64,000 nt of DNA from Octopus vulgaris (GCA_951406725.2 OX597842.1:31806001-31870000), one strand, 5' to 3'. Positions 815 through 28,114 are shown, counted from the first letter of the stretch. The notes: a model not told the origin generated them from the letters alone. Translations and numbers: made by a program.

Positions 815-1261
815 TTACCTCTCTCTCTCTTTACTCTTTTTACTTGTTTCAGTCATTTGACTGGGAAGAGATGTGTACAAATCCATCTTTATAGGTATGA
901 GATGCCATTCTTTGTGGTTGAGCTCCCATAGTTCTTCAAAATTGCATGGATTCTTCTGATGGACTCTCCTCTTTAGTTCTGTCCACATTTGCTTGATAAT
1001 ATTTAAGCCAGGACTCTGGGCTGGCCAGTCTTTCAATACAGTAACACTTTCATCAGCCAGATTCTGTTGTGTTGCATGCAAACTGAGGAATGGAGCTCCA
1101 TTAAGCTGAAAAATCTCTCCTTCATCCAAATTGTCCTTCAGCAACTGGATACATTTGGCACTATTCAAGTTACCATTAATTTTAACCAATTTTCTTGAAC
1201 CATCACTTTTTATGTATACCCAAAGCATCAGACTCTTTCCCACAAACTTCACTGTTTTCAT
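815..1261 (-). pseudogene. Tc1 DDE transposase C-terminal fragment
   Basis: Translation contains FQLNGAP and DWPAQSPGLNIIKQMWTELKRRV, matching Tc1 FQQDNAP and WPxQSPDLNPIE motifs with the catalytic acidic residues mutated. Confidence 0.9.
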
Positions 1262-1267
1262 TGTGTA

Positions 1268-1268
1268 A

Positions 1269-1302
<34 letters not shown>

Positions 1303-1839: not shown

Positions 1840-2067
1840 CTTTACTATTTCTGTGTCTTGAGGATAAACCACAAAGTTTACAACTTTGATCTGGCTTGAA
1901 TTTAGATCTGAGTAGTTTTTGACTGCTTCATACATAATTCCAGGTAGGTTTTCTATGGGGTACTTCAATTTTCCAGCTCCTATTATAGGAAATGCCAAGC
2001 ATTTTGCTCCCATTTTCTCCGCAGTGTGTAAGCATATGGTAATCATTTGAGTCAAGTTTGCCAGAAT
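1840..2067 (-). CDS. Macrodomain exon B, unit 1 (PARP9/14/15-like macrodomain, C-terminal half)
   Basis: 228 nt, acceptor tttttttag, donor gttggt, phase 0/0. ILANLTQMITICLHTAEKMGAKCLAFPIIGAGKLKYPIENLPGIMYEAVKNYSDLNSSQIKVVNFVVYPQDTEIVK contains the macrodomain hAFPxIGxG loop. Confidence 0.9.
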
Positions 2068-2497
2068 CTAAAAAAAATAATTGTTTAGTAATTGATAATG
2101 AACATTTTATTAAATTATTTCCTTATTACAGGAAGAAACCATTAAGTTGTAATAAATATATTCTCCTCTCACAACTCCTCTCACTCCTACCACTTCTAAA
2201 CATAACTGTCATTCCTATCACTCTTTAGTCCTGCAAGGGACAAGGCAACCTCACTCATGATGCTGCTACAATAAAACAGACCCCATCCACCGTGTAAAAT
2301 GGTTGGTGAATGAAGAGAGACAATGCAGACCCAAGAGGAGTCTTTAGTGTTGTTGAGGACATGACAACCTCTCTAGTGCTCGTGCCATGACAGAGAAAAA
2401 CTCACCAATACAGACAGTAAAACACAGAAATATGTTTTAATATAGTCTTATTTATCAGTCATATAACTGATACAGTTCTATATTTAAGAGATGAGGA

Positions 2498-2643
2498 ATT
2501 ATGTACATTATTTACATATGACAGATATTTGTCCTCATCTTGTTTGTTGCTAACACAACGTTTCAACTGATATACCCTCCAGCCTTCATCAGGTGTCTTA
2601 GGAAATTTCGAAGCTGGGTTCTCATTCCTAAGGTATTTTTCGA

Positions 2644-2687
<44 letters not shown>

Positions 2688-2970
2688 TCACTGTCTAGAA
2701 TTGAACTCAGAATCTAGGGATTAGTAGCCCACACTTTAACCACTATAGAGAGTGCGGGCTACTAACCCCAAGATTCCAAGTTTGATTCCAGGTAGTGACC
2801 TGAATAGTAATAATAATAATAACTTCGAAAAATACTTTAGGAATGAGAACCCAGGTTTGAAATTTCCCCAAGACACCTGATGAAGGCTGGAGGGTATATC
2901 AGCTGAAACGTTGTGTTAACAACAAATAAGATGAGGACAAATATCCGTCAAATGTAATAATATAAATAAT
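2498..2970. mobile_element. Foldback/MITE-like palindrome (~230-bp arms, very short loop)
   Basis: 2498-~2740 is the reverse complement of ~2750-2970 (gacagatatttgtcctcatc ... gatgaggacaaatatccgtc). Absent from the matching intron of unit 2. Confidence 0.85.
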
Positions 2971-3022
2971 GAACATGCATAAGGTTCTTCTCAATTATTA
3001 ACTGTTTCAATAAATCAATATC

Positions 3023-3237
3023 CTTTTTTACTTTAGGCACAAGGCCTGAAATTTTGTAGGAGGGGTCCAGTCGATTAGATCGACCCCAATACACAACTGG
3101 TACTTAATTTATTGACCCCAAAAGGATGAAAGGCAGAGTCGACATCCGTGGAATTTGAACTCAGAATGTAAAGACAGATGAAATATTGCTAAGCATTTCG
3201 CCCAGCATCCTAACATATCTGCCAGCTCACCGCCTTC
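3023..3237 (-). mobile_element. tRNA-derived SINE (family B) with 15-bp TSD
   Basis: caataaatcaatatc at 3008-3022 and 3238-3252. Empty site in unit 2 at ~15011-15025. Confidence 0.85.
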
Positions 3238-3269
3238 CAATAAATCAATATCATATGATTGATACTTAC

Positions 3270-3497
3270 TAAATCAGAGGAATATTCATCCCAGGGAGGT
3301 AATGCCAGATGAAATACATTCTTACAGTTGAGGTTATATCCTTTAGTGATGGCTATTTTAGATGTAGAAATACCTCGAGGATATTTCTGGTTACATTCAT
3401 CTTGTATCTCTGAACCAGCAGCAAAGAGAATAGATTTGGAGACAGCACCACTGTCAAGCTCAAGGTTTTTATTGGTGCTGTTAACGATGACATCAAC
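3270..3497 (-). CDS. Macrodomain exon A, unit 1
   Basis: 228 nt, acceptor ttttgtag, donor gtaagt, phase 0/0. VDVIVNSTNKNLELDSGAVSKSILFAAGSEIQDECNQKYPRGISTSKIAITKGYNLNCKNVFHLALPPWDEYSSDL has the macrodomain DVIVNxxN and GxVSxxIxxAAG motifs. Not in the ORF track. Confidence 0.92.
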
Positions 3498-3769
3498 CTA
3501 CAAAAGTAATTAATGGTAAACAACTAAGGAACATTCCATGGAGAGAAGAGAGATACATTGTTGCAGTTGATATTGTTGTTAAGAAAGGCTCTACAGAATG
3601 GCTGTAGTAAGTTTGAGGTTGTTAAAGTTAGCAAAAGATATACTCAAGATATCAGATGTGAAGGAAATAAGTTTGACTGAGAAAATGTTTTAATTAACTG
3701 TAATGATTCCTTATTTGGAAATGAAATAACATGAAAATATAAATAAGTTACATGAATCTATTTACTCAC

Positions 3770-3904
3770 AGATACATTAGAAATTGAATCAATCAATAGT
3801 TGTATGTTGATGCCAGCATTTTCTCCAGATGCCACATTATCTGGGTGCCACAGAAGAGGGTTCCTGTTGTGAACCAGGAAGGGATGCTTTCGATGATGCA
3901 GTGT
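3770..3904 (-). CDS. Probable linker/N-terminal macrodomain exon C, unit 1
   Basis: Acceptor tttttcag, donor gtgagt. Ends GENAGINIQLLIDSISNVS in phase 0, resembling the IxIxxGDI strand that precedes VDVIVN. The 5' frame is ambiguous. Confidence 0.65.
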
Positions 3905-4659
3905 CTGAAAAAAATAGACAAATATCAGTGTGTGTGTGTGTGTATCATTCACTTCTTTCAGTCATTCGAATGTGGCCATGCTGGGGCACCACCTTGAAGG
4001 CTTTTAGTTGAATGAATTAACCCCGTTATATCTTTTATCTTTTACTTCTTTCAGTCATTCGAATGTGGCCATGCTGGGGCACCACCTTGAAGAATTTTTA
4101 GTCAAATGAATCGACCCCAATACATTAATATTTTAAAGCCAGATACTTATTCTATCAGTCTCCTTTGATAAACCACTAAGTTATGGAAAGTGTGCTCTGG
4201 AACCCTATTACCACCATCTTTCTCCCCTCCAGATACTGTCATGCACCCTTGCATAAATATGAGGAGATCATGAGTCTCCCCTATATCCAGACAACTATGC
4301 TTGACCCTCTGGCAAACTTTAGAATTTCTACCCCTGGCATCAAGGCTCTTCCCCAACCCAATTCCATTGGGGGGTTTTATCCTTTTCCATTTTTTGCTTT
4401 GTTTTGCAAGATACTTGGTGACCTCACCAGTGCTGGTGCCATGAGAAAAGCACACTGTAAAATGGTTGGCAATATGAAGGGCAACCAGCCAGCCAGCCAT
4501 AGAAACCATGCCAAAGCTGAGCGTGGAGCCTAAAACAGATCTGGTGGTCATCAGATCCTGTCAAACTGTGTAACCCATGCCAGAGTAAATGATGGACATT
4601 AAATGAGGATGAGGATAATGATACAGTCCGTGAGTCTGTAAGTCAGAAAAACACGCACT

Positions 4660-5050
4660 CGTACATTTTTCAACAGAGTGGGTATATTACTTACTTGTAC
4701 TTGTGGCGACATTCACCCTGGGTGGGTTGTGTCGGCTTCTTCTACTCATGGAAGAAGTTTCGTGGGGATATGTGGATTTCACAAGCGGTCCCCAACAATC
4801 CCACATGTGGAGACATCCTGTTTGCCACAGATTGTACGCAGACACAGAGACAGAACGACTGGGGAGCTGCCAGTTACCAAAGCAGACACTCCGAGGATTT
4901 TCACCAGAGCCCCGTCTGCCGGGTTGTGGCCCTAATACCACTCAGTGTCAGACCAATCCGCCTTGGGTGGCACTACCAGGAACCGAAGTTCCCGACGGCA
5001 TAGCTCTGACACTACCCATTGCCAGTGTCCCCACCACGGAATGGGCATAT
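4660..5050 (+). repeat. Unclassified ~400-bp interspersed element, copy 1
   Basis: Similar in reverse complement to 10780-11195. Confidence 0.75.
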
Positions 5051-5574
5051 TAAGCGTAAACTATTCAGTATTATAAATCTATTTCAACCATTCTTACAAA
5101 TTTGTTTTGTACCTGATATTGGGTAATTAGGTGATTATCTAAGACTGTGCTCATCAGAGTGGTTGGTATGGAAAAGTTGCAGTAGCTTTCTGTCAGCAAG
5201 TTCCACATCTGGTTTGTGGAAGCTGTGAAAATAACTGAACAAATGAGAAGGAAGCAGTTAGAGAAGGGACCCTATAAAGAATATGTCCCTTGCCCCAAAT
5301 CCCTGAACAAGAAGTAATTACCTGCAAAGTGAGGTTTGGGAGGAGAGGATGGGACAAACACTCAAACAGTTAAACTCATGTCAATGCATTTATGAGTTGC
5401 ACTCAAAAAGTATCTGACTTTATTTTTCCTTCCCATGTGGGAAAAACCCTTTGGGTGAGCAGTGACTTCACCTTTCCTGTGCAACTGCAACTGCTCCTGG
5501 ACATTAAACCTAGAGTATAAACTTGTAGTGTGCACTGGACAGACCTTTGTGTTCATGCAAGATGACCAAATGTA

Positions 5575-5730
5575 TTGAGTAAAGATATTGCATCAAGTTT
5601 TACCAAAAGCTTGGTGACACTCAAGCTCAAAGCATCCAGAAAAGTTCAGCAGGCCTTCAGTAATGATGCCATGGCCAAAACTCAGATAAATAACTCGTAA
5701 AACCACTTCAGACAAAGCCACAACTCAGTG
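5575..5730 (+). mobile_element. Mariner transposase N-terminal fragment
   Basis: Reads like CIKFYQKLGDT...VQQAFSNDAMAKTQI, a mariner HTH region. Confidence 0.6.
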
Positions 5731-5971
5731 GAGTGTGAGGCATGCTCAGACCTTGCATAAATTGTTCACCTCACAACAAATTGTTTACCTTTTGAATGAA
5801 ATCCTTCATTTTCCTGTTTATTTATTACTCCTTCATTTTCGTCTTTATTTTGGAGATATTCATCAAATTTCTGTTAAAACAGAAAACAATCAGAATCACT
5901 TTTATGTTTTATTTTTTCATTCTTGCAAAAGGAAGAGATTTAATTCAACAAAACGAAACAAAATATTTGAA

Positions 5972-6570
5972 ATACAAGGTCTGATCAATAAGTATTTGAA
6001 CTGTTGCCTTAGTAAGGAAGCTAAAGTAAGCAGAGTGAAGCTGCTTGGCACAGATTGACCTTAGCTTACTTCCGTTGATTACAGTAGAGCTTGGAAATAA
6101 CATGTGTAACATGAAATTGAAATATCGACCATGACAGAAAAAGTTGTCATGGTGATACCTGCTCAATGGCACACACAAAATTGCAGAAAGTGTATGGAGA
6201 GGAGTGTATGAGCTGCACACAAGTGTACAAGTGGTTCAGACATTTCCAAAATTGCCGTAAAATGTCGAGAGTGACAAATGTTCGGGGAGACCCACAGACA
6301 ACATAAATGAGTAAAACGCTGCAGATGTGCATGCAGCTGTGAGGGGAAATCATTGAATCACCATCCTTGAGTTATCAGAGGATGTGCAGATTAGTTACAG
6401 TTCAGTTCAGTCGATTATCACTGAAGATTTGGGTGTGAGATGCATGTCTGCCAAGTTTGTGCCAAAACTGCTTTCAGTTGATGAAAAAGACATTTGGATT
6501 TCAGTTGCACAAAATCTCCTTGACTGTGTTGAGAACGGTGAAATCTTTTTGAAAACTTTGCATAGGTCTC
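5972..6570 (+). mobile_element. Mariner-like element, 5' TIR plus degenerate transposase
   Basis: Starts tacaaggtctgatcaataagt. Encodes ISYSSVQSIITEDLGVRCMSAKFVPKLLS, similar to the mariner WVPxxL motif. Confidence 0.85.
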
Positions 6571-6574
6571 TGAG

Positions 6575-6700
6575 CAGGTATCACGAAGCTTTTGACAAAA
6601 TTTGATGCAGATTCTCTTCTTCTTCATGGTCAATGCAACAACCACACACTACACACCTTCTTTCCAAGCACTGCTGTAAACAGTAGACGTGAGCTAGAAC
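6575..6700 (-). mobile_element. Mariner transposase N-terminal fragment, opposite strand
   Basis: Translation contains KRICIKFCQKLRDTCSETY. Confidence 0.6.
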
Positions 6701-7089
6701 GGGTATGTCAAACATGCAGCCCATTGCAAAACACCTGTGACCCACACAGACAGCCACCCTTTTCCCCTGAATGCATTGGCATCTTTGGATTTGGATCTGA
6801 TTACAAGCAAGAAGAAAGTTATACAATTATTCAGAGGCCCAGAGTTGCGAAATTTCCCATCAGCAAGCTAGCAATTGGCTAATCTGTGACTCCAGATGTT
6901 TTGTACATCAAATGTTACAGGTGTTTGAACATTGTGGAATGTACCTGTCAACGTTCATATGAGTTGATTTTCCTTTCTTCTCTTCATCATTCATTAAATT
7001 CTCATCTGGTAGACAGAGTTCATAGAGTGCTTTCAAGCCCTGCATTGCCTGTGTCCTGCGATTCTTGTCCCAGTGTGCTGCATTTCTGG

Positions 7090-9402
7090 TGAGTAGATTT
7101 ACAAATCTATTTTGTCTTTAAACTGAATGGAGGAGGGCGAGTGTTTCAAGAAAAATGGGAATTATAGTATTTTTGCACAACAGTGAGTGGAAAGATACAC
7201 TGAAAGAGTACAACTTGAAAAGACATTATGAAACATATCATCGATCTTATGATAAATATGGAGGTGGTTCAATGCATGTTTCAAGACTCAAGGAACTGAA
7301 GGCTAACTCAACACAGCAACAGACCTGTTTCACAGAAAAATCAGAAAGGGAATGTCGCTTCCGTTACAGAAAGCTATAAACTCCACCAAATGATCGCCAA
7401 GAATGGGAAATCTTACAGTGAAGGAGATTTCATAAAGCAATGCTTTGTAAAAAACGTCTGAAATTGTGTGTGCAGAGAAAGCATACTTATTCAAAGATAT
7501 CTCATTAACCAGGAACACTGTTGCTCAATGGATTGATGAAATGTCAGGTGATCTGAAGCAACAGTTGAAAGCTGCATCATCAAGATTTGAACATTTTGTA
7601 TTGCTATTGATGAGACCATTGACATCACTGGAAAAGCACAGCTCGCAGTCTTCATCGGGGCCTGTGACAGTGAATTTAATATTTATGAAGAACTGATTGA
7701 ACTGATCTCCATGCATGATACTACAACAAGCCAAAACATCTTTGAGAAAGTCGAACGGGTTCTGTATGATTATGGTTTTGATTTGAGTAAACTTGCACAC
7801 TTATCTATTCATGGTGCAGTGAATATAGTTGGCAGACATAATGTGTTTCTGCTAAGTTACAAACAAAAATAAAAAATTTGCATCTGGATCCATTAGTTGC
7901 ACATTTTCATTGCATTATTCATCAGCAAAATTTGTGCTCAAAGATTTTAAAATTGGATCTTGCGCTTAGTTTGGTCACAATGACAGTGAACTATATCAGA
8001 GGCCACGCTTTCAACCACTGTCAATTCAGTCAGTTGTTGAAAGATATGGATAATCAGTTCACTGATGTTCCATTCTTCACAGAAGTCTGCTGGTTTTCAT
8101 GCCACAAAGTGCAGAAAATATTTCATTCGTTGAAATAAGAAATAATTATGTTTTTGGAGATGAAAGGTCAAAAACAGATGAAACAAAAGATGAGAGGTGA
8201 TTCCAGGATCTGGCTTTTGCTGTGGACATTACTGCACAATTAACTAATCTCGATTTGTAATTACAAGGTAAAAACAAACCCATCACTCAGTTGTATGGTG
8301 ACATCAAGTGCTTCATTAGAAAATGAAGCTTATGGAAGTCACAGTTGTCAAATGAAAATTTAATCCATTTTCCTAAGTGCAAAGAGCTGAAAAACTGCAC
8401 TAATACTGAGTCTGTACTTAGCTTTGCTAAGTATGACAGTCACCTGGAATTTCAGGAAAGATCTCTCATCTTTTGAACATCTGTTTGCATTATTCTCAGC
8501 ACCATTCACCTTTGATGTTGCTAAGGCAAAAGAAAGTCTGCAGAGGAAGCTATTCAAAATGCAGTCAGATTCTTCACTCAGATCAAAGTATTTTGAAGTG
8601 GGGATAACTGGTTTCTTTTCATACCTTCCTGAAAACTTTAAAGACTTCAGAAAGTTTACCACAAGGATTATGGCAATGTTTCATTCTACCTGTGTGTGTA
8701 AACAGTTATTTTCCTTCATGAAATCAACAAAAACTTCTCAGAAAACAAGACTGACAATCAACACTTGTTATCTGTTTCTTTATTACCCACAAGGGGCTAA
8801 ACATAGAGAGGACAAACAAGGACAGACAAACGGATTAAGTCGATTACATCGACCCCAGTGCGTAACTGGTACTTAATTTATCGACCCCGAAAGGATGAAA
8901 GGCAAAGTCGACCTCGGCGGAATTTGAACTCAGAGCGTAACGGCAGACAAAATACGGCTACGCATTTCGCCCGGCGTGCTAACGGTTCTGCCAGCTCGCT
9001 GCCTTTTATCACTTGTTATCTCTGATCAAACTCAGAACTGCACAGACATTTCAGCCAGACAAACCAAAAATTTTCAGCAAAAAGGTGTCAAGCCTCACGA
9101 CAAAATACTGAAAATGTTTGAAAAGTTGTAACTAAATGTTCATTTTGAACTATTGTAAATTTTGTACGATATATTTGTTGCTGTTGCATTCACATCTATG
9201 TTGCCTATTTAAGCTTCATTTTTTTTCTTTTGGTTAAAGTACTTCATTACTTACCCAAAGTATGTTTCTAAGTTTAAGTAAGAAAAATATTCTGCAATAA
9301 TTTTTATGAAATGACTTCAATTGGAATTGAAGCGAGTGCAGCCCTTGTGACAACACAAATGTGGCCCATATGGCTCTTGGGAGCCCCTCACTCTGACATG
9401 CC
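7090..9402 (+). mobile_element. Degenerate hAT (Charlie/SPIN, GTF2IRD2-like) transposon
   Basis: Frameshifted pieces LKEYNLKRHYET, ISLTRNTVAQWIDEMSGDL, HCIIHQQNLCSK and a hAT dimerisation-like tail (MAMFHSTCVCKQLFSFMK). Probable 3' end tgacatgcctg near 9402. Confidence 0.88.
8774..9009 (-). mobile_element. SINE family B monomer with 12-bp TSD
   Basis: cacttgttatct at 8762-8773 and 9010-9021. tRNA-like head with a B-box (gagttcaaattcc). Confidence 0.9.
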
Positions 9403-9444
9403 TGAGCTAGAATGTTAAAACTTAGTGAGCATGCACAACAGAGT

Positions 9445-9540
9445 TCGAGGTCAATCTGTACCAAGTGGCATAACTCTGCATGCTTTAGCTTCATTACTCT
9501 GGCAACAGTCCAGATATTTATTGATCAGACTGTGAACTTA
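9445..9540 (-). mobile_element. Mariner 5' end fragment
   Basis: Reverse complement of ~5972-6062 with scattered mismatches. Confidence 0.75.
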
Positions 9541-10359
9541 ACGATTTATTTCTCATCAATAACAAACAAACGAGGAAAATTATTTTGTTATTCAGATCAA
9601 AGCTATTCCATGTATAACCGTCCATGTCTTCCAGAAGATATGAAACCTGTCTCAATATGGTAATACAGTGGATGCGGCAGAAAAACCTCTCACAATTTAC
9701 ATGGCCACTGATGTAGTGTTAGTGAAGTTAAACATGTGGCAATGGTGTCTTCATGTAGCTGAAGTTGTATTGTTTCTTCTCTCCACTCACCATTCTGATT
9801 AAAACTGCTGAGTCTTGTGTTTGCTGTTGAAATGTCTATCAAGAATGTTGAAGTTGAGGTTCTTTGGTGCATCTTGTGTAGCCAAGAATATTTGAGCAAC
9901 AAAAGCAGAGTACAAGGTAATTATTTTCATATTGTAAGCAAGAAGGAGGAGGTGGAAGAGGTCCAACAATTAGGATCATGGTCATTCTTAAGAGAGATGA
10001 CAAAGGAAAAGAGAAAAGATTCAAAAAGAAAGAACTTCACAAACAGTTCTACAGTGGACAGGAATTTCCCCAATTTCTTCATTACAGCATATGGACATAA
10101 AGAATGCCTTTTGGTATTAACACTGCTTCTGTTGCTATTAATTATCTTTAATAAGCCTTCAGGCTATTTGTGACATCACTGTCTATATATCGTTGACAGG
10201 GAGATTTGGCTGTTATGCTGCTACAGGGTGTCTGTCACTGATGAACTTGAGCAGGGCGAAAATACGTGATCTGGCAGTTCTGGTGCCTTTAGCAGATGAT
10301 TGTTGTCCACCAACAATATGCACCACATCTGCCTAAAAATTGACTTCAGTTTAAATTCA

Positions 10360-10668
10360 GTTTCACCACTCTGACTCTGAGTCCTCTACTGTTGGCACCT
10401 CTGACTCTGACTCTTCTGTATGTAATTAAGTAATTGTGGTCAACCTATCTCATAAAGCATATGCATACACTTGTACTTTGAGTAGGCCTATATGTTATAA
10501 CTGGTTTATATTAAAGAATGAAGGCATTGTGAGTCAGAGTCGGTATAGTTTTACCGACTCCAACTCCAGCTACCCCTTAATTGTTTCGACTCCATCTCCA
10601 ACTCCACAACTCTGACACTCTGACTCCAACTCCATGACTCAAACTTCAGCTCTGACTCCACAGTTCTG
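10360..10668. mobile_element. Degenerate non-autonomous DNA element with (GACTCC/GACTCT)n subterminal repeats
   Basis: Repeated gactcc/gactct hexamers ending ctccacagttctg. The class assignment is from recall. Confidence 0.45.
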
Positions 10669-10689
10669 GTTTATTCAACAAGCACACAG

Positions 10690-11195
10690 TGTAAATACCA
10701 TATGCAACATCTTATAGGATTGAGTACTACATACATAAATACAAGAACAGGGAGATAAACATACAAACAATGTCTACTGGCAGTCCCCAAAGTCCATACC
10801 CTTCTCACCGTGGTGGGGACGCTGACAACGGGTAGTGTCAGAGCTATGCCGTTGGGAACTTCGGTTCTTGGTAGGGCCACCCAAGGTGGATTGGTCTGAC
10901 ACAGAGTGGTATTAGGGCCACAACCCGGCAGACGGGGCTCTGGTGAAAATCCTTGGAGTGTCTGTTTCAGCAACCGGTGGCTCCTCGGTCATTCTGCCCC
11001 TGCATCTGCGTACTATCTGCGGCAAACAGGATGTCTCTACATGCGGAATTGTTGGGGACCACTTGTCAAATCCACATATCCCCACGAAACTTCTTCCATG
11101 AATCCTCAATGGCGAATACAATGCCTCGAGGGTGGTGGAAGAAGCCAACTCAACCCGTCCAGGGTGAATGTCACCGCAAGTACAAGTAAGTACTG
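10690..11195 (-). repeat. Unclassified interspersed element, copy 2 (longer, with AATAAA-containing 3' tail)
   Basis: Inverted homologue of 4660-5050. Confidence 0.75.
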
Positions 11196-11399
11196 GCAGA
11201 GAATGAGCAAATGAAAACATCACAGGATTTAAGGTCAATAACAAAAATAAGCAACAGAAAGACTTCAAAAACTCAGATAATATAAAAGACAGTGGCAATA
11301 ATATTAAAATGAATCATCAAAAAAGATCCAACAAAATGGATTACCGATTTCACAATGTTCCAGATACTAACAATCAAATGGAACATCATGAAAACAGAA

Positions 11400-11830
11400 T
11401 CAAAAAGTCATGAGATAAATATAAAAATTAATAGTACAAATAACTGTACAAGCTGTAGAAAATCCACTTGTCTGCTCATGAACCAATGTGTCCAAAAAAA
11501 CATAGTATACAAATAAACAATCTCCACCTCCCAACATAAATATGTGTACATAGGTGCCATGGAAAACCAATTCAAAGTCAGTTATCACAGCCACACGTTG
11601 TCATTCCGAAAAATAAACAGACAACACGCAACTTCACTGGCAGACCTCATATGGGGAATGAAAGAATCATAAATTAAATACAAAATGGAATGGTCAATAA
11701 TAAAAAATGCACACCTGTGTGGTTCGTTACTTGAGGAAGCATTGAGTATACTGATGAATAATGAGAACCTGGTAAACAAGCATGATGAGAAAATTCCAGA
11801 GTATAATCACTGTGCCAAATATGCATTTTC
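11400..11830 (+). mobile_element. Penelope-like retroelement GIY-YIG endonuclease remnant
   Basis: Hand translation CTSCRKSTCLLMNQCVQKNIVYK*TIST...VYIGAMENQFKVSYHSH...TSLADLIWGMKES*IKYKMEWSII shows the VY..YIG motif and two in-frame stops. Confidence 0.85.
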
Positions 11831-12000
11831 AAGATGGGACAGTGTATAAAAATATCTATAATTTAGTTTCCCCACTCCACCCATTCTTCCCATTCCACAT
11901 ATGTATGTGTGTGTGTATATGTTGGGGTGCTCAAGGATATGCCTATGCGAATGCATATGTGTAGGTAAATGAATGTATAGGTGTGAATGGGATTCTTGAT

Positions 12001-12019
12001 CAGAGAGAGAGAGAGAGAG

Positions 12020-12104
<85 letters not shown>
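12001..12104. repeat. (GA)n(GT)n microsatellite
   Basis: Direct reading. Confidence 0.95.
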
Positions 12105-12106
<2 letters not shown>

Positions 12107-12810
12107 ACATTCACAATCCAGCATTGCCATGGCAGGATTTGAAATCAGAATGCCAAGTACTGAAACGAACACCACAGAAGGTCTTCTGTCATTCTTCTAC
12201 TTCTATGAATCCAACAGAGAAGACGGACATTTTTATGAATTGTGAAGGAATAAAAGGTTAGTATGGCACCGGCAGGATTTGAACTGAGAATACTAAGGGC
12301 TGAAACAAAGATTAGAAGGTTTCCTATCTGCCAGTTTTGACGACAGCAGACTGTGATTTAAGAGACACTTGGCTGCTATTACTAGCAAGTCAAGGCACAG
12401 CATAGAAGCCCCTTAATTGATTCATCCAACTTTGAGAAGAAATGTAAAGAATTGTGGGAAAGAGTTTCCAAAGCGTTCCACTTTGAAGAACAGAAATGAA
12501 AGAAAACCATCAGTGTTCTGGTGGTGCCATTAACACATTTTTGGTTGGTCAGTAACCAAAATGGAATTGTTGAAGGATGTTGTGGGTAGGTAGTGGTAGT
12601 GGTGGTGGTGGAGGTAGCTACACTGAATCCATATCAAGTTACTAAGAATTAAATCATGGAATGGAAGAGTTGAAGAAAACCAAGCTAACCTAAAAGTATG
12701 GTAGACAGGGCCATGAGACACATCAAAGATTCCAACATTCCAACTGAAGAATTCTAAGACACCAATATATAAATTTACAGAAGGATTCCATATTTTTGTT
12801 TCTATTTCCT

Positions 12811-13690
12811 GGATAAAACACAGCAGAGGATCATGGACTGGCAACTCAAGCTGGCTGTGGACAAATGTACCACCATGCATTTTGGGAGGAAAAACTCAGC
12901 GTCTACTTACTCCCTCCACAACACTAATCTCAAAAAGTCTTCTTGTGAACGTGACCTGGGCATTATTGTCGACAGTGATTTGTGTTGGACAAAACACATT
13001 GCTAAAATTGCCAAGAAGGCTGAGGGTGTCTTGGCATCACTCACCAAGTCCTTTGTGAGCCACTCTCCGGCTATCTATCTGCAGCTTTATATAGCTATGG
13101 TGTGGCCTCAACTGGAATTTGCATCACTGGTCTGGAACCCCTATCTTTCTCAGGATATTAATCGTCTGGAAACCGTTCAGCGACGTGCAACTAAGAGAAT
13201 ACCCTCCATCAGGCATTTGCCATATTCTGAATGCCTTACTTCCCTGGGCATGGATACATTGAAACTCCGACGTCTGGCAGCTGACTTGGTAGACACTCAT
13301 AAAATTATTAACCATCTTACAAACAATAACTCTGAGCACCTTTTCAAACTCCACCTGTCTAACACCCGTGGACATGTTTACAAAGTCAGAAAACAGCACA
13401 GCTCCTTCCATGACTTTCGGAAACATTTTTTCACGCTGAGAGCTGCTGAAGCATGGAACAAACTGCCGGCATCAGTTGTTAGTTGTTGGAGCACTGCATC
13501 CTTCAAAACTTCCATGCTTCCTCAGATTTGCCAACACTACACCTGATCTTTCTCCCCTCCATACACACGCGAGCATGTATCTGACTCATACACTGTTCAC
13601 TTCCCAGACATTTGTACATTACTGCAGATGCTTTATACGCACTTTTGACAAGTTGTGGTGCACCTGAGCACTGTATACAATAATTTCCAT
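12811..13690 (+). mobile_element. CR1-clade LINE, 5'-truncated 3' end (RT C-terminus)
   Basis: The 237-aa ORF has KCTTMHFG, ERDLGIIVD, LETVQRRATK and NTRGH motifs. Followed by a 3' UTR ending in ttattattcat. Confidence 0.92.
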
Positions 13691-13699
13691 TATTATTCA

Positions 13700-14118
13700 T
13701 TTACTCTTTTACTCTTTACTCATTTACTTGTTTCAGTCATTTGACTGCGAAGCCATGCTGGAGCACCGCCTTTAGTCGAGTAACTCGGTCCCGGGTCTTA
13801 TTCTTTTTTTGTAAGCCCAGTACTTATTCTATCGGTCTCTTTTTGCCGAACCGCTAAGTGACGGGGACGTAAACACACCAGCATCAGTTGTCAAGCAATG
13901 CTAGAGGGACAAACACAGACACACAAACACACACACGCATATATATATATACATATATACGACAGGCTTCTCAGTTTCCGTCTACCAAATCCACTCACAA
14001 GGCATTGGTTGGCCCGGGGCTATAGCAGAAGACACTTGCCCAAGATGCCACGCAGTGGGATTGATCCCGGAACCATGTGGTTGGTTAGCAAGCTACTTAC
14101 CACACAGCCACTCCTGCG
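13700..14118 (-). mobile_element. SINE family A, full length (tRNA head, internal TA/TG microsatellite, TTACTCTT-type tail)
   Basis: Minus strand starts ggcgcaggagtggctgtgtggtaagtagc. The family recurs throughout the window. Confidence 0.9.
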
Positions 14119-14201
14119 CCTATTTAATGTAGAATTTTTTTTTTTTTGTAAATTCCAAAAATATCAACTTAAAACAACAAATGGAAAATAAACAAACCAA
14201 C

Positions 14202-14429
14202 CTTTACTATCTCTGTGTGTTTTGGAAAAACAAAGTAAACATCTTTGATGCAGCTTGAATTTTGATTTGAATAGTTTTTCACGAAGCTTCTATACATAGT
14301 TCTGGGCAGGTTTTCAATGGGATAATTCAATGTTCCAGCTCCTAATATAGGAAATGCAAGGCTTTTTGTTCCCATTCTCTCAGCAGCTTCCAGACAAGTG
14401 GTTATTATTTGAGTCAAGTTTGCCAGAAT
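14202..14429 (-). CDS. Macrodomain exon B, unit 2
   Basis: 228 nt, same splice sites and phase as 1840-2067. ILANLTQIITTCLEAAERMGTKSLAFPILGAGTLNYPIENLPRTMYRSFVKNYSNQNSSCIKDVYFVFPKHTEIVK. Confidence 0.88.
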
Positions 14430-15042
14430 CTAAAAAAAATAATTATTTAGTAATTGATAATGAACATTTTATTAAATTATTTCCTTATTACAGGAAGAAA
14501 CCATTAAGTTGTAATAAATATATCCTCCTCTCACAACTCCTCTCACTCCTACCACTTCTAAACACAACTGTCATTCCTATCACTCTTTAGTCCTGCAAGG
14601 GAACAAGGCAACCTCACTCATGAAGCTGCTACAATAAAACAGACCCAATCCACCGTGTAAAATGGTTGGTGAATGAAGAGAGACAATGCAGACCCAAGAG
14701 GAGTCTTTAGTGTTGTTGAGGACATGACAACCTCTCTAGTGCTCATGCCATGACAGAGAAAAACTCACTAATACAGACAGTAAAACAGAGAGAAATATGT
14801 TTTAATATAGTCTTATTTATCAGTCACATAACTGTTGTTAGGCCATGAGGCTTTTTTCCTTCTATTTATATATAAAAGTGTCCTGTTCATCGATATCTTC
14901 TGCTTCCTTCCAATGATAACTTGGAAGAACAAATATTAAACAGGATGCTGACATTTGCTTTATGATTCTCACACAACATGCATAAGGTTCTCTTCAAACA
15001 TTAACTGTTTCAATAAATCAATATCATATGATTGATACTTAC

Positions 15043-15270
15043 TGAATCAGAGGAATTTTCATCCCAGGGAGGTAATGCCAGATGAAATACATTCTTACAT
15101 TTGAGGTTATATCCTTTAGTGACGGCAATTTCAGATGCAGAAATACCTTGAGGATATTTCTGGTTACATTCATCTTGTATCTCTGAACCAGCAGCAAAGA
15201 GAATATATTTGGAGAAAAAACCCTTTTGAAGCTGGAGTTCTTTATTGGTGCTGTTAATGATGACATCAAC
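15043..15270 (-). CDS. Macrodomain exon A, unit 2
   Basis: 228 nt, acceptor ttttcaag, donor gtaagt. VDVIINSTNKELQLQKGFFSKYILFAAGSEIQDECNQKYPQGISASEIAVTKGYNLKCKNVFHLALPPWDENSSDS. Confidence 0.9.
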
Positions 15271-15520
15271 CTTGAAAAGTAATTAATGGTAAACAACTAA
15301 GGAACAGTCCATGGAGAGAAGAGAGATACATTGTTGCAGTTGATATTGTTGTTAAGAAAGGCTCTACAGAATGGCTGTAGTAAGTTTGAGGTTGTTAAAA
15401 TTAGCAAACGATATACTCAAGATATCAGATGTGAAGGAAATAAAATGTTTGAGTTTGACTGAGAAAATGTTTTAATTAACTTTAACGATTCCTCATTTGA
15501 AAATGAAATAACAATTAAAT

Positions 15521-15620
15521 NNNNNNNNNNNNNNNNNNNNNNNNNNNNNNNNNNNNNNNNNNNNNNNNNNNNNNNNNNNNNNNNNNNNNNNNNNNNNNNN
15601 NNNNNNNNNNNNNNNNNNNN
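15521..15620. other. Assembly gap (100 N)
   Basis: Run of n. Confidence 1.
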
Positions 15621-16500
15621 TCTTTCCCTTCTGCTCCCCTCTCTCTATAACGTCACTGCATCCCCTCTCTCCCTCTCTCCCTCTCTTCCCGCTTTCTGCC
15701 TTTCACCATCTCTTGCTCCTCTCTATGATTCCTCTATTTGTCTGTCTCTCTCTCTCTCGCTCTCTTTCTGTTGCGTCTATCACTCGCCCGCTTCCTCTCT
15801 CTCTCTCTCTCTGTTGCATCTATCTCCCGCACGACTGCTTTCCTTCCCCTCCCTCCCTCTCTCTCTGTTGCAGCTCTCTCTCCCCCTCTCGTTCTCTGCC
15901 TTCCTTTCTCACGTTTTTCTCTTGTTGCTCTCTCAGATTCCCTTGCCTGTCTCTCTCTTTCTTTCTCTCTCCCTCAATTGCATCTATCTTTCTCTCTCTC
16001 TCTCTCTGTCCTGCTGTCTTTCTTCCCTGTTGCCTCTCTCTCTTTCTTTCTTTCTCTCAGTTGCATCTATCTTTTCCCGCTTTCACTCTCTCTCTCTCTA
16101 TCTGTCCTGCTGTCTTTCTCCCCTGTTGCATTTATCTCCTCCCGCTTCCTCTCTATCCCTTTCTTTCTCACCCTTTCTCCGGCTTCCCCTGCACCCCCTC
16201 TCTCTCTCTTTCTCTCCTATCTATAATTCTACTCCCACTACCCCTCTTCCTCTCGGTTCAACTCTTTCACAACCACTGCATCCCTCTCCTTGTGACTACC
16301 TTACCTTCTTTACTCTCTCTCTCTCTGTCTTCCACCCCTCTTTCACTCTTACCATTCTTTCTACTGCACCTCTCCCTCTCTTACCACTCTTTCTCCTGCA
16401 CCTTTTACTCTCAAACACCTCTCTATAATAATCACTACTTTCCTCTGCCTATCCCTATTACTCCCTTACTGCTGTTACTCTTTCTCTCTCTCTCTCTTTT
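15621..16500. repeat. CT-rich low-complexity/polypyrimidine tract
   Basis: Degenerate (CT)n. The overlapping Ser/Leu-rich ORFs are compositional artefacts. Confidence 0.9.
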
Positions 16501-16949
16501 CGTTTCGGCTTCTTTCATTTTCCCCTTTACAAGCCGACAAGGGAAAACCTGCTAGAAAGAGCAGCCAGATATCACTCGAATCCTTCCTTAATTGACTTAA
16601 AGAAACAGACAAAAAGATGGATTGGATGAAAGACACCGGATTGACAACGTAGTCCAAGATACACTATGCCTGAATATAAAAAAAACGGGATGGTCACAGA
16701 TAGAACGTCTTTGATCGTAGGTTTGAGGTTTGTCTGGATCAGGACTGACCTGGGGTTAAATAATAACATCTATAGCCACTAATGCTAACTACTATACTGT
16801 ACATTAGACAATGTAGTCCTAGATACACTATGTCTGAATGAAAGACGGGATGGTCACAGCTGGAGCATCTTTTATGATCATAGGTGTATCTAGACCTAGA
16901 CTGACCTAGGGCTAAACAACAACAGTAACACTGAGCATCCCATAATCAG

Positions 16950-16950
16950 C

Positions 16951-16986
<36 letters not shown>

Positions 16987-16993
16987 TGTAGTG

Positions 16994-17025
<32 letters not shown>

Positions 17026-17230
17026 GGTAGTGGTGGTGGTAGTAGTAGTAGTAGCAGTAGTAGTAGTAGTAGTTGTTGTAGTGGTGGTGGTGGTGGTAGT
17101 AGTACTAGTAGTAGTAGTGATGGTGGTGGTAGTGATAGTAGTAGTAGTAGTTGTAGTAGTAGTAGTAATTGTAGTGGTGGTAGTAGTAGTAGTGGTAGTG
17201 GTGGTGGTAGTAGTAGTAGTAGTAATTGTA

Positions 17231-17263
<33 letters not shown>

Positions 17264-17272
17264 GTAATTGTA

Positions 17273-17303
<31 letters not shown>

Positions 17304-17470
17304 CAGTAGTAGTAGTGGTGGTGGTGGTAGTAGTAGTAGCAGCAGTAGTAGTAGTAGTGGTAGTAGTAGTAGTAGTTGTTGTAGTGGTGGTGGTGGTAGT
17401 AGTACTAGTAGTAGTAGTGATGGTGGTGGTAGTGATAGTAGTAGTAGTACTGATGATAGTAGTAGTGATG

Positions 17471-17506
<36 letters not shown>

Positions 17507-17811
17507 TAGTAACGCAAGCAGTGGTGGTGGTGGTGGTAGACGTTTCAGTCCCAGCTCAGCTGAGCTGATCGAGCAAGCCTTCGTCGGAACACGGGTATTT
17601 CCAAGTGTGACCATCCCATCTGTTTCTCCTTTTTTTTCTCTCTCTCTCTCTCTCTCTCGAAGGACCAGAACCATCCGAAGTGTCCTTCCTTTCGCGTGAT
17701 TTGAGGGCGGATTGGCCTGCTATTTCTTTTTCTATTATGCCGACTTTCCTTCGTCGGCTTCTAAAACAGATGGTGACGGTAGTAGTAGTAGTAGTAGTAG
17801 TAGTAGTAATG

Positions 17812-17865
<54 letters not shown>

Positions 17866-17868
17866 ATG

Positions 17869-17913
<45 letters not shown>

Positions 17914-17916
17914 ATG

Positions 17917-17957
<41 letters not shown>

Positions 17958-17961
17958 GGTG

Positions 17962-17997
<36 letters not shown>

Positions 17998-18360
17998 GTG
18001 ATGGTAGTAGTAGTAGTAGTAGTGGTGGTGGTGGTGGTGGTGGTGGTAGTAGTAGTAGTAGTAGTGATGGTGGTAGTGGTAGTAGTAGTTGTAGTAGTAG
18101 TAGTAGTGATGATTGTAGTAGTAGTAGTGGTGGTGGTGGTGGTGGTAGTAGTAGTAGTAGTAGTTGTAGTGATGGTGATGGTGGTATTGGTAGTAGTAGT
18201 TGTAGTAGTAGTAGTTTTAGTAGTAGTGATGATAGTAGTAGTAGTAGTGATTAAAGTGCAGGTGGTAGTATTGATAGTAATTGCCGTGCAGGTGCTAGTA
18301 GTAACAATAATGGTAGTAGTAGTAGTAGTGGTGGTTGTGGTGGTGGTGGTGGTTATGGCA
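16950..18360. repeat. Two compound (GTA/GTG)n trinucleotide arrays (16950-17540, 17775-18360)
   Basis: Direct reading. An internal higher-order copy is visible (17080-17140 vs 17380-17440). Confidence 0.95.
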
Positions 18361-18631: not shown

Positions 18632-18668
<37 letters not shown>

Positions 18669-20414: not shown

Positions 20415-21065
<651 letters not shown>

Positions 21066-28030: not shown

Positions 28031-28114
28031 ATCTTCTACTATAGCCTCGGGCCGACCGAAGCCTTGTGAGTGGATTTGGCAGACGGAAACTGAAAGAAGC
28101 TTGTCATATATATG

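What the first reader, a model, noticed from the sequence alone, without database searches (positions are those of the whole stretch)
1840..15270. Tandemly duplicated ~12.4-kb macrodomain module (PARP9/14/15-like), largely missed by the ORF track
Seen: two copies of the exon pair A (VDVI(V/I)NSTN...) and B (...AFPI(I/L)GAG...), each with canonical splice sites, an open frame and homologous introns. Known: multi-macrodomain PARP9/14/15 proteins bind ADP-ribose and act in antiviral/innate immunity. Inferred: this is either an expanding macrodomain array within one gene or a tandem cluster of immune-related paralogues in an invertebrate.
Basis: partly seen in the sequence, partly recalled or inferred. 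Interest (0 to 1): 0.75.

Follow-up and report, generated by a model that had tools for sequence, protein, structure and literature searches.

The report
Octopus PARP14-like macrodomain exon array
The region holds real, tandemly repeated exon cassettes for ADP-ribose-binding macrodomains: a catalytic-domain-less, partly damaged copy of a gene from the large PARP14-like family of the common octopus, already in the public annotation, so it is largely ordinary.

Summary
On the minus strand, exon pairs A2/B2 (15043-15270, 14202-14429) and A1/B1 (3270-3497, 1840-2067) are 228-nt phase-0 exons with AG/GT sites. Each joined pair scores as Pfam Macro (71 and 69 bits, cut-off 22). A third pair lies 24 kb left of the window.

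The genome is Octopus vulgaris chromosome 29. The public model CAI9744149.1 maps exactly onto this locus. Each cassette has four exons (L, C, A, B), 675 nt in frame. It models as a macrodomain closest to human PARP14 macrodomain 2 (pLDDT 90, TM 0.89).

The gene ends in a short exon with an in-frame stop. No PARP catalytic, WWE or macro1 exon lies within about 100 kb, and none of the catalytic exons is on chromosome 29. It is therefore a macro-only paralogue, not a PARP.

The locus is collinear for at least 75 kb with chr1:9.368-9.446 Mb, with 0.92% intron divergence. The block starts exactly at the assembly gap at 15521-15620, so it may be a young duplication or a misplaced haplotype. This copy carries a 2-bp deletion with a stop in exon C1.

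Chromosome 1 holds about 17 PARP14-like genes with 2-7 cassettes each. Macro exons diverge faster than introns, through gene conversion between cassettes.

The parts
15043..15270 (-). Exon A2: first half of macrodomain unit 2 (VDVIINSTN...SSDS), 228 nt, phase 0/0. Its 3' splice site reads CAAG here, against GTAG in the other units and in the chr1 copy.
14202..14429 (-). Exon B2: second half of macrodomain unit 2 (ILANLTQ...AFPILGAG...TEIVK), 228 nt. It carries a 3-bp insertion and a cluster of substitutions found only in this copy (MYRSFVKNY against MYEAVKNY).
5789..5870 (-). Exon L1: linker exon (KFDEYLQNKDENEGVINKQENEGFHSK plus 1 nt), 82 nt, phase 0 to 1, with AG/GT sites. It joins B2 to C1.
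3770..3904 (-). Exon C1: linker plus the first beta strand of unit 1 (...GINIQLLIDSISNVS). It is 135 nt instead of 137: a 2-bp deletion relative to C0 and to O. sinensis shifts the frame.
3837..3839 (-). Premature TAA created by the 2-bp deletion in exon C1, when the exon is read in the frame delivered by L1 (...EPSSVAPR*).
3270..3497 (-). Exon A1: first half of macrodomain unit 1 (VDVIVNSTN...SSDL), 228 nt, phase 0/0.
1840..2067 (-). Exon B1: second half of macrodomain unit 1 (ILANLTQ...AFPIIGAG...TEIVK), 228 nt, phase 0/0. It is identical to the chr1 copy.
15521..15620 (.). Assembly gap of 100 N. It is the upstream edge of the block collinear with chr1:9.368-9.446 Mb. It lies where exon C2 is expected; C2 is intact in the chr1 copy at C1:9368030-9368167.
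16471..16518 (-). First coding exon (MKEAETKRERERKSNS) of the public model CAI9744149.1. It lies across the gap in GA-rich low-complexity DNA, and I doubt that it is a real exon.
2068..3269 (-). A-B intron of unit 1, 1202 nt. It is homologous to the 613-nt and 610-nt introns of units 2 and 0, with about 590 nt of inserted repeat.
14430..15042 (-). A-B intron of unit 2, 613 nt. It is 98.9% identical to the unit 0 intron, although the flanking exons are only 86% identical.
5871..14201 (-). Large intron between B2 and L1. It is not duplicated and holds decayed transposon fragments: HTH_48 of a Mos1-type transposase at 6121-6306(+), and DUF4371 at 7591-7872(+) below Pfam's cut-off.

Best explanation
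Window 1840-15270 (minus strand) holds two of the three tandem macrodomain cassettes of a macro-only paralogue of the PARP14-like family on Octopus vulgaris chromosome 29. The locus is partly annotated as CAI9744149.1.

Shown: a cassette is four exons. L is 82 or 46 nt (phase 0 to 1), C is 137 nt (1 to 0), and A and B are 228 nt each (0 to 0). With the 82-nt L that makes 675 nt in frame, so cassettes can be gained, lost or exchanged without breaking the reading frame. C+A+B models with high confidence as a macrodomain whose nearest relative, by sequence and by fold, is human PARP14 macrodomain 2. After unit 0 the gene ends in a linker-type exon with an in-frame stop (KFNEYFQEILANGSAA*, C29:31775320-31775367). 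No ADP-ribosyltransferase, WWE or macro1 exons were found near it.

Shown: the locus is one copy of a large segmental duplication. It matches chr1:9.368-9.446 Mb with 0.92% intron divergence; a related locus lies at chr1:207.02-207.06 Mb, known only from exon-level protein matches. Both sit inside an expansion of about 17 genes on chromosome 1, in which cassette number varies from 2 to 7. Macro exons diverge faster than their introns, through short gene-conversion tracts between cassettes.

Inferred: the product would be a multivalent reader of mono-ADP-ribose with no writer or eraser activity, acting as an adaptor or competitor in ADP-ribosylation signalling of the antiviral or stress type. 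The chromosome 29 copy itself looks impaired, with a stop in exon C1, a weakened acceptor at A2 and private changes in B2.
For: Macro HMM scores of 71 and 69 bits against a cut-off of 22. Best PDB sequence match is PARP14 macrodomain 2, 3q71, E=5e-22. The AlphaFold model has pLDDT 90 and pTM 0.87, and its top Foldseek hits are 4d86, 3q71, 3vfq and 5o2d, with TM 0.85-0.89 (0.89 and rmsd 1.6 A for the first three). Exon limits and phases were read from the DNA. CAI9744149.1 (P0157) maps letter for letter onto the locus, and its contig length equals that of C29. The orthologous-type gene XP_029635758.1 of O. sinensis reads Nt-C-A-B-L-C-A-B-T, and its terminal exon is 100% conserved here. The O. 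vulgaris chr1 model CAI9716701.1 reads C-A-B-L-C-A-B-L-C-A-B. No catalytic, WWE, macro1 or N-terminal exon lies in window -100000..+104000. The family's catalytic exons are all on chr1 apart from one weak chr6 match, and none is on C29. Collinearity with chr1:9368195-9446372 is 97-99.7%. Substitutions are 3.27% in exons against 0.92% in non-exonic DNA, Fisher p=5e-15. Of the differences in A0, 16 of 20 carry the state of another unit, as do 13 of 17 in B0; the 5' part of B0 equals B1. Exon identity is below intron identity in 30 of 36 unit pairs, and pooled pN/pS for exon A is 1.14. Protein A0A6P7SCI3 (= XP_029635758.1) was detected in O. vulgaris skin mucus with 8 peptides, 4 of them unique (PMC11431876 supplements; identity).
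Against: No transcript data could be consulted, so the connectivity B2-L1-C1-A1 at this copy is inferred from phases and from relatives. In frame, exon C1 of this copy stops translation, and the public model skips B2, L1 and C1. The 5' end is unknown: exon C2 falls in the gap, and the annotated first exon is doubtful. ADP-ribose binding is not shown; the second phosphate-binding loop reads GAGKLKYP against GTGNLGFP in human macrodomain 2. A pN/pS near 1 also fits relaxed constraint. Placement on chromosome 29 rests on a scaffold gap on one side and on a young 4-kb transposon on the other, so the copy may be allelic rather than paralogous.
Confidence: 0.75

Rival explanations
1. Assembly artefact of placement. 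The block from window 15520 to about -59500 is not a chromosome 29 locus. It is the uncollapsed second haplotype of chr1:9.368-9.446 Mb, inserted into the chr29 scaffold during Hi-C curation. The macro array stays real, but this 'paralogue' would be an allele.
For: Non-exonic divergence from the chr1 copy is 0.92%, below the 1.22% heterozygosity reported for this individual. The assembly paper states that 495 small scaffolds were placed by hand (PMC10700109). The block begins exactly at the 100-N gap. Its other end coincides with a young transposon that has many 96-99% identical copies. Sequence to the right of the gap is chr29-specific satellite and repeat.
Against: The same gap-free contig runs on for at least 24 kb past the end of collinearity. 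Window -80000..-75001 has no chr1:9.4x counterpart; it matches chr1:207.07 Mb at 93%. Searches give only weak support, because transposon matches filled the scored candidates. The region belongs to a true multi-copy duplication, with a third locus at chr1:207.02-207.06 Mb. purge_dups was applied to the assembly.
Confidence: 0.4
2. The chromosome 29 copy, whether locus or allele, is a decaying non-functional duplicate. Its open A and B exons merely reflect its youth.
For: A 2-bp deletion in exon C1 gives an immediate TAA. The A2 acceptor is changed from TAG to AAG. All six substitutions that separate B2 from the chr1 copy, plus a 3-bp insertion, are private to this copy. Exon C2 and the 5' exons are not recoverable. 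The public model can only keep an open frame by skipping three exons and by using an internal acceptor. pN/pS is at or above 1.
Against: Unit 0 (L0-C0-A0-B0-T) is fully intact, with its splice sites. At about 1% divergence, open frames say nothing either way. The differences in A0 and B0 are conversion tracts that keep the frame open.
Confidence: 0.35
3. The units are separate single-macrodomain genes in a tandem cluster, each with its own start and stop.
For: The units are 12-28 kb apart. Some public octopus models are single-unit proteins that end in ...TEIVKVG by reading into the intron (P0011).
Against: No start or terminal exon lies between the units. The linker exons L1 and L0 have phases that fit B to C. 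Exon A starts at VDV and lacks the first beta strand, which exon C supplies. Multi-unit models exist in O. sinensis and O. vulgaris.
Confidence: 0.05
4. The array is the macro part of a complete PARP14-like enzyme whose catalytic exons lie further downstream than I searched.
For: In the chr1 copy, catalytic exons lie on the same strand about 79-87 kb beyond the terminal exon, at C1:9495114-9503228.
Against: No catalytic exon of the family is found anywhere on C29. None lies within 75 kb downstream of B0. The exon after B0 carries an in-frame TAA, conserved in O. sinensis and in both O. vulgaris copies. Collinearity with chr1 ends about 49 kb before the position of those catalytic exons.
Confidence: 0.05

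Closest known systems
Human PARP14 (ARTD8) macrodomain 2 (PDB 3Q71, 5O2D; MD1-MD2 in 4D86 and 3VFQ)
   Same: It is the best match by sequence (E=5e-22) and by predicted fold (TM 0.89, rmsd 1.6 A, 30% identity). The DV(I/V)VNS start, the (V/I)FH(L/V)..P.W strand and the AFP.IG.G loop are shared.
   Different: Human PARP14 has MD1-MD2-MD3 plus RRM/KH, WWE and ART domains in one protein. Here only MD2-like domains are present, repeated, with no ART. The loop reads GAGKLKYP, not GTGNLGFP. Binding is untested.
Octopus sinensis LOC115211026, 'PARP14-like isoform X2' (XP_029635758.1 / A0A6P7SCI3, 441 aa)
   Same: It has the same architecture: C-A-B, L, C-A-B, then the terminal exon KFNEYFQEILANGSAA*. 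Its locus is collinear with this one at 92-98% DNA identity. It is macro-only. The protein has been detected in octopus skin mucus.
   Different: It has two units, not three. No counterpart of unit 2 plus L1 is seen in its locus. Its exon C is intact. Its unit-a exons differ by 11-14% from unit 1 of the near-identical chr1:9.4 Mb copy, although the introns differ by only 2.4%. Its true O. vulgaris orthologue is probably chr1:207.02-207.06 Mb (CAI9716701.1).
Octopus PARP14-like / 'PARP15' enzymes on chromosome 1 (e.g. XP_029633869.1, CAI9716753.1, CAI9714770.1)
   Same: The same L-C-A-B cassettes at 69-78% protein identity and 89-94% DNA identity, with the same exon structure.
   Different: They carry macro1 upstream, and a PARP catalytic domain (Pfam PF00644, 64-66 bits) preceded by a WWE-like stretch downstream. 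This locus has none of these.
Tandem PARP14-like clusters in amphioxus and sponges, and rapid evolution of macroPARP macrodomains in vertebrates (Perina 2014 and Daugherty 2014, as summarised in PMC13224862; PMC4038475)
   Same: Lineage-specific tandem duplication of PARP14-like genes, with fast evolution concentrated in the macrodomains.
   Different: Here the duplication is also within genes (2-7 MD2-like cassettes). Diversification appears to run through exon-sized gene conversion. I found no paper that describes the octopus expansion.
Vertebrate PARP9 (a partial PARP14 duplicate without transferase activity)
   Same: A PARP14 derivative that has lost writer activity and keeps macrodomains as readers (PMC13224862).
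   Different: PARP9 keeps an inactive ART fold and an MD1-type macrodomain. This gene has neither.

Membership tests
Macro domain (Pfam PF01661) | Sequence scores above the curated gathering threshold of the family HMM | tested here: met
   A1+B1 scores 71.1 bits and A2+B2 68.9 bits against a cut-off of 22, covering profile positions 1-113 of 118.
Macro domain (Pfam PF01661) | Three-layer alpha/beta/alpha macro fold | tested here: met
   The AlphaFold2 model of C1(part)+A1+B1 has pLDDT 90.0 and pTM 0.87. The top 50 Foldseek PDB hits listed are all macrodomain structures, or designs built on one, with TM up to 0.89.
Macro domain (Pfam PF01661) | Binds or hydrolyses ADP-ribose | not testable with these tools
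   Only motif conservation is seen (VDVI[VI]NSTN, AFPI[IL]GAG). This needs a biochemical assay.
macroPARP (PARP9/14/15-type) proteins | Macrodomain belongs to one of the macroPARP macrodomain clades (MD1-MD3) | tested here: met
   The best PDB matches are PARP14 MD2 (81 bits) and PARP9 MD2 (59 bits), against 45-46 bits for PARP14 MD1 and MD3. Foldseek gives the same order. No formal phylogeny was made.
macroPARP (PARP9/14/15-type) proteins | C-terminal PARP/ART catalytic domain in the same gene | tested here: not met
   No match lies in window -100000..+104000. A family catalytic query finds 17 loci on chr1 and none on C29. The Pfam PARP model also finds none on C29. The gene ends in an exon with an in-frame stop.
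macroPARP (PARP9/14/15-type) proteins | MD1-type (hydrolase-type) macrodomain at the head of the macro array | tested here: not met
   The macro1 segment of CAI9716753.1 gives only weak cross-matches to A exons (27-37% identity) in the 204 kb examined. The Pfam scan finds only the three A-type exons on C29.
macroPARP (PARP9/14/15-type) proteins | WWE domain and N-terminal RRM/KH region | tested here: not met
   tblastn with full-length octopus relatives (P0003, P0006, P0007) finds none of these parts in the 204 kb.
Octopus PARP14-like macro2 cassette family (defined here) | Four-exon L-C-A-B cassette, A and B of 228 nt in phase 0, conserved splice sites (TAG|GTT...|GTAAGT; TAG|ATT...|GTTGGT) | tested here: met
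   All three chr29 units share this structure, as do three chr1 units and five of six O. sinensis units; the sixth, o36_b, has a shifted end to exon B. At least 40 further places on chr1 match the unit at 89-98% DNA identity.

The most novel reading that the evidence does not exclude
Octopuses may have turned the PARP14 macrodomain-2 cassette into a modular, rapidly diversifying recognition repertoire. In this reading, a frame-neutral four-exon cassette is amplified to arrays of 2-7 within about 17 tandem genes. Its exons are kept different, or made different, by exon-sized gene conversion under diversifying selection, while the introns are homogenised. That is the exon-versus-intron pattern known from MHC peptide-binding exons. 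Macro-only genes such as this one would then serve as secreted or cytosolic ADP-ribose readers or decoys in an arms race with viral macrodomains or ADP-ribosylating effectors.
Probability: 0.25. Interest if true: 0.6.

Novelty: new member of a known kind. Interest (0 to 1): 0.35.

Why it matters
For annotation, the public model at this locus (CAI9744149.1) is probably chimeric, and the locus may be a misplaced haplotype or a very young duplicate. This is useful to anyone who counts immune genes in the octopus assembly.

For biology, it points to an apparently undescribed, large, octopus-specific expansion of PARP14-like genes. Their macrodomain-2 cassettes vary in number from 2 to 7 and diverge faster than their introns. 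This extends to a mollusc the picture of macroPARPs as fast-evolving players in host-pathogen conflict. It also offers a natural set of MD2 variants for asking what macrodomain 2 recognises.

None of this overturns current knowledge.

Tried and rejected
1. The Pfam PARP model run on the six-frame genome found only C11, C24, C6 and C17. I first read this as absence of macroPARP enzymes near the macro clusters. A query with the family's own catalytic region then found 17 loci on chr1. The HMM scan is therefore insensitive to these split, divergent exons. The absence on C29 still stands with the better query.

2. I first took chr1:9.37-9.42 Mb to be the orthologue of the O. sinensis gene. CAI9716701.1 maps to chr1:207.02-207.06 Mb and carries the O. 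sinensis-type unit-a exons, so the chr1:9.4 Mb and chr29 copies are paralogous duplicates of that locus.

3. The second duplicated piece (1-353 / 12440-12792) was checked in three frames for a hidden exon. None was found; it looks like intron with repeats.

4. I tried to follow the collinearity further, and to collect 30 family units for a family-wide comparison of exons and introns. I used O. sinensis loci instead.

5. Two DNA probes beyond the block were swamped by young transposons and gave no clear answer.

6. P0001 and P0157 could not be located by exact look-up.

7. Literature searches for an octopus or mollusc PARP14 expansion found nothing specific.

8. A simple point-mutation model of positive selection was set aside. 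Synonymous differences are also raised in the exons, and most differences carry the state of another cassette, which points to gene conversion.

Full report
OBSERVATION. Reading the DNA gives four exons of exactly 228 nt: A2 15043-15270, B2 14202-14429, A1 3270-3497 and B1 1840-2067. Each is open and in phase 0 at both ends. Each is preceded by AG and followed by GT (GTAAGT after A, GTTGGT after B). A self-comparison shows three homologous stretches between the two copies: 1-353 with 12440-12792 (96.6%), 1775-2469 with 14128-14834 (89.0%), and 3235-3731 with 15008-15513 (92.1%). So the exon pairs and their introns really are duplicated, at a spacing of 11.8-12.4 kb. The roughly 8 kb in between (3937-12110) is not duplicated. 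It is intron with decayed transposon pieces: an HTH_48 match above Pfam's cut-off, and DDE_3 and DUF4371 matches below it. Copy 2 ends at a 100-N assembly gap (15521-15620). A third A/B pair lies outside the window at -24515..-24288 and -25353..-25126.

IDENTITY OF THE DOMAIN. The joined peptides A1+B1 and A2+B2 score 71.1 and 68.9 bits on Pfam Macro, against a cut-off of 22. With the upstream exon C added, the best solved relatives by sequence are human PARP14 macrodomain 2 (3q71, E=5e-22), then PARP9 macrodomain 2; PARP14 macrodomains 1 and 3 score far lower. An AlphaFold2 model built on a 21-sequence alignment has pLDDT 90.0 and pTM 0.87. Its top Foldseek hits are the PARP14 MD2 structures 4d86, 3q71, 3vfq and 5o2d; the first three give TM 0.89 and rmsd 1.6 A, and 5o2d gives TM 0.85 and rmsd 1.9 A.

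ORGANISM AND EXISTING ANNOTATION. The window is G000:C29:31806001-31870000 of a 2.80-Gb genome. A search of 1.8 billion representative proteins gives octopus proteins as the top hits. They are named 'PARP14-like' or 'PARP15' in O. sinensis and O. vulgaris. One O. vulgaris protein, CAI9744149.1 (P0157, 421 aa, 'Hypothetical predicted protein / Macro domain-containing protein'), sits on a contig of 34,562,309 bp, which is the length of C29. It maps letter for letter onto this locus: a first exon at 16471-16518, the second half of A2, then A1, B1, a linker exon at -18814..-18770, exon C0, A0, part of B0, and a last exon at -32357..-32286. The genome is therefore Octopus vulgaris (assembly GCA_951406725.1, PMC10700109), and the locus is already in the public annotation. 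The model nevertheless looks forced. It starts across a scaffold gap in GA-rich DNA, uses an acceptor inside A2, and skips B2 and two further exons.

GENE ANATOMY. Aligning full-length relatives to 204 kb around the window reveals two more exon types. L1 (5789-5870, KFDEYLQNK...FHSK plus 1 nt, phase 0 to 1) and C1 (3770-3904) lie between B2 and A1. L0 and C0 lie before A0. Exon C supplies a linker and the first beta strand (...GI.I.L..DSISN.S) that exon A lacks. L (82 nt) + C (137) + A (228) + B (228) makes 675 nt, a frame-neutral cassette. Octopus relatives read B-L-C-A-B repeatedly: four cassettes in XP_029633869.1 and three in CAI9716701.1. That supports one gene with an internal array, not separate genes. 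After B0 comes a linker-type exon, KFNEYFQEILANGSAA followed by TAA (C29:31775320-31775367). It is 100% identical to the C-terminus of O. sinensis XP_029635758.1 ('PARP14-like isoform X2', 441 aa, macro-only). A preserved donor-like GT follows 4 nt after the stop.

WHAT IS MISSING. Within window -100000..+104000 there is no macro1, WWE, N-terminal or ART exon. A query with the family's own catalytic region finds 17 loci on chr1 and none on C29. The general Pfam PARP model misses these octopus exons altogether, so only the family query is informative. This gene is a macro-only derivative of the PARP14-like family and fails the membership test for a macroPARP enzyme.

RELATION TO OTHER COPIES. 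The block from window 15520 down to about -59,480 is collinear with chr1:9,368,195-9,446,372 at 97.3-99.7% identity. The chr1 copy holds everything in order: C2', A2', B2', L1', C1', A1', B1', L0', C0', A0', B0' and T'. A related locus at chr1:207.02-207.06 Mb, seen here only as exon-level protein matches, encodes CAI9716701.1. It carries the O. sinensis-type unit exons and is probably the true orthologue of the O. sinensis gene. The O. sinensis locus (CM016859.1:205.35-205.42 Mb) is collinear with the chr29 and chr1:9.4 Mb copies from upstream of exon C1 to beyond the terminal exon. It shows no counterpart of unit 2 plus L1.

IS THE CHR29 COPY A REAL LOCUS? Three points favour a misplaced second haplotype. 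Non-exonic divergence from chr1:9.4 Mb is 0.92% (327 of 35,489 sites), below the 1.22% heterozygosity reported for the sequenced animal. The assembly paper also reports that 495 small scaffolds were placed by hand. The block starts exactly at the gap and ends at a young transposon. Two points go the other way. The same gap-free contig continues into sequence with no chr1:9.4x match, which instead matches chr1:207.07 Mb at 93%. The region is also demonstrably multi-copy. I leave this at about 40% haplotype and 60% true duplication. Read depth would settle it.

STATE OF THIS COPY. Exon C1 has a 2-bp deletion relative to C0 and to O. sinensis, which gives TAA at 3837-3839 in the frame coming from L1. 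The chr1 copy has, at the same site, an in-frame 18-bp deletion between two TGTGGCA repeats. The A2 acceptor reads AAG instead of TAG. B2 has a private 3-bp insertion with a cluster of private substitutions. Exon C2 falls in the gap. Unit 0 and the terminal exon are intact. This copy, or allele, therefore looks partly disabled.

MODE OF EVOLUTION. Between the chr29 and chr1:9.4 Mb copies, substitutions are 3.27% in exons and 0.92% elsewhere (odds ratio 3.6, Fisher p=5e-15). Of the 59 exonic differences, 55 lie in A and B exons. In A0, 16 of 20 differences carry the state of another cassette, as do 13 of 17 in B0. The first ~50 nt of B0 (alignment positions 1-52) are identical to B1. These are short gene-conversion tracts between cassettes.

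The same picture holds across nine units: three from chr1 and six from three O. sinensis loci. These nine give 36 pairwise comparisons that are not statistically independent of one another. Exon identity is below intron identity in 30 of the 36 pairs. Pooled identities are 96.1% for the C-A intron, 90.6% for exon A, 91.9% for the A-B intron and 87.3% for exon B. The extreme case is units 2 and 0: their intron is 98.9% identical and exon B 81%.

Pooled pN/pS for exon A is 1.14. Averaged over a domain with many invariant core positions, this suggests positive or diversifying pressure at some sites, but relaxed constraint is not excluded. Against plain decay, nearly all of the 48 A-type exons on chr1 are open. 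My rough estimate, which is an inference, is that neutral drift at this divergence would leave only about a quarter to a third of them intact.

FAMILY PICTURE. On chr1 there are 19 macro1 exons, 48 A-type exons and 17 catalytic 3' exons, in four clusters: 5.3-5.8, 7.5-9.5, 206-207.2 and 215.8-216.6 Mb. The usual order is macro1, then 2-7 A/B cassettes, then the catalytic exons. One stretch (206.61-206.77 Mb, plus strand) has macro1, seven cassettes and catalytic exons with nothing else between them, which suggests an eight-macrodomain gene.

FUNCTION (INFERRED). PARP14 MD2 is an ADP-ribose-binding module; in human PARP14 the hydrolase activity is assigned to a single macrodomain, MD1 (PMC10499325, PMC10221186). 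A protein made only of MD2-like domains would read mono-ADP-ribosylated targets multivalently, and could act as an adaptor or as a competitor of the full-length enzymes. The O. sinensis-type macro-only protein (A0A6P7SCI3) was identified in O. vulgaris skin mucus with 8 peptides, 4 of them unique. It was more abundant in aquarium-kept animals (PMC11431876). At least one member of this subfamily is therefore translated. This does not show that the chr29 copy is expressed.

NOVELTY. Tandem duplication of PARP14-like genes in invertebrates, and fast evolution of macroPARP macrodomains, are both established (PMC13224862, PMC4038475, PMC10221186). I found no paper on the octopus expansion, nor on intragenic MD2 arrays. 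The finding is a new member of a known kind, with a modestly interesting pattern of exon-focused diversification.

Noticed in passing
window 15621-64000: To the right of the gap the window is mostly satellite and low-complexity DNA. It includes (AGT)n/(GTA)n at 16951-18248, CA/TA-rich arrays at 18632-19591, (AT)n at 20651-21035, a 140-bp satellite at 22185-25253 (22 copies, 96%), a GC-rich 26/78/156-bp repeat at 34327-35035, a 69/137-bp satellite at 43799-45129, a 62-bp satellite at 47453-53299 (95 copies), and a (CCA)n-like array at 56805-57865. A probe from 28000-34000 matched only repeats, some of them specific to chr29.
   Followed up: partly
window 36870-37396, 37953-38438, 61211-61946: Tandem copies of 177-bp and 184-bp units that look like tRNA-derived SINEs. 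Related pieces occur inside the macro-gene introns, for example at 3061-3235 and 8838-9005.
   Followed up: no
C29:31775320-31775367 (window -30680..-30633): The terminal exon is a linker-type exon with an in-frame TAA 4 nt before a preserved donor-like GTAAAT. The same stop is present in O. sinensis and in the chr1 copy, so the truncation that makes the gene macro-only predates the species split.
   Followed up: partly
window 3837-3850 and C1:9379823-9379942: Two different deletions hit the same spot of exon C1 in the two O. vulgaris copies: 2 bp (frameshift) on chr29, and 18 bp (in frame, between TGTGGCA direct repeats) on chr1. O. sinensis has the full-length exon.
   Followed up: yes
window 16471-16518, 15043-15180 and outside the window: The public model CAI9744149.1 looks chimeric. 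Its first exon lies across a scaffold gap in GA-rich DNA, it enters A2 at an internal AG, it skips B2, L1 and C1, and it leaves B0 early for an exon at -32357..-32286 instead of the conserved terminal exon.
   Followed up: partly
G000:C1:206613272-206771770 (+): One macro1 exon, seven macro2-like A exons and catalytic exons lie in a row on one strand with nothing else between them. This is possibly a single PARP14-like gene with eight macrodomains.
   Followed up: no
G000 genome-wide: The Pfam PARP HMM run on six-frame DNA missed all 17 catalytic loci of the octopus PARP14-like family, while a family protein query found them. HMM-on-genome absences for split, divergent exons should be treated with caution.
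   Followed up: yes
window 14430-15042 versus window -25125..-24516: The A-B introns of units 2 and 0 are 98.9% identical, while the flanking exon B is only 81% identical. Introns appear to be homogenised while exons are kept or made different.
   Followed up: partly
L019 (window -59479..-55458) and C1:9442370-9446372: A roughly 4-kb young transposon with dozens of 96-99% identical copies genome-wide marks the end of the chr29/chr1 collinearity.
   Followed up: no
window 815-1270(-), 6121-6306(+), 7591-7872(+), 12773-13546(+): Open frames inside the large introns are transposon remnants: DDE_3 (below cut-off), HTH_48 of a Mos1-type transposase (above cut-off) and DUF4371 (below cut-off). The 257-aa frame at 12773-13546 has no Pfam match.
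   Followed up: partly
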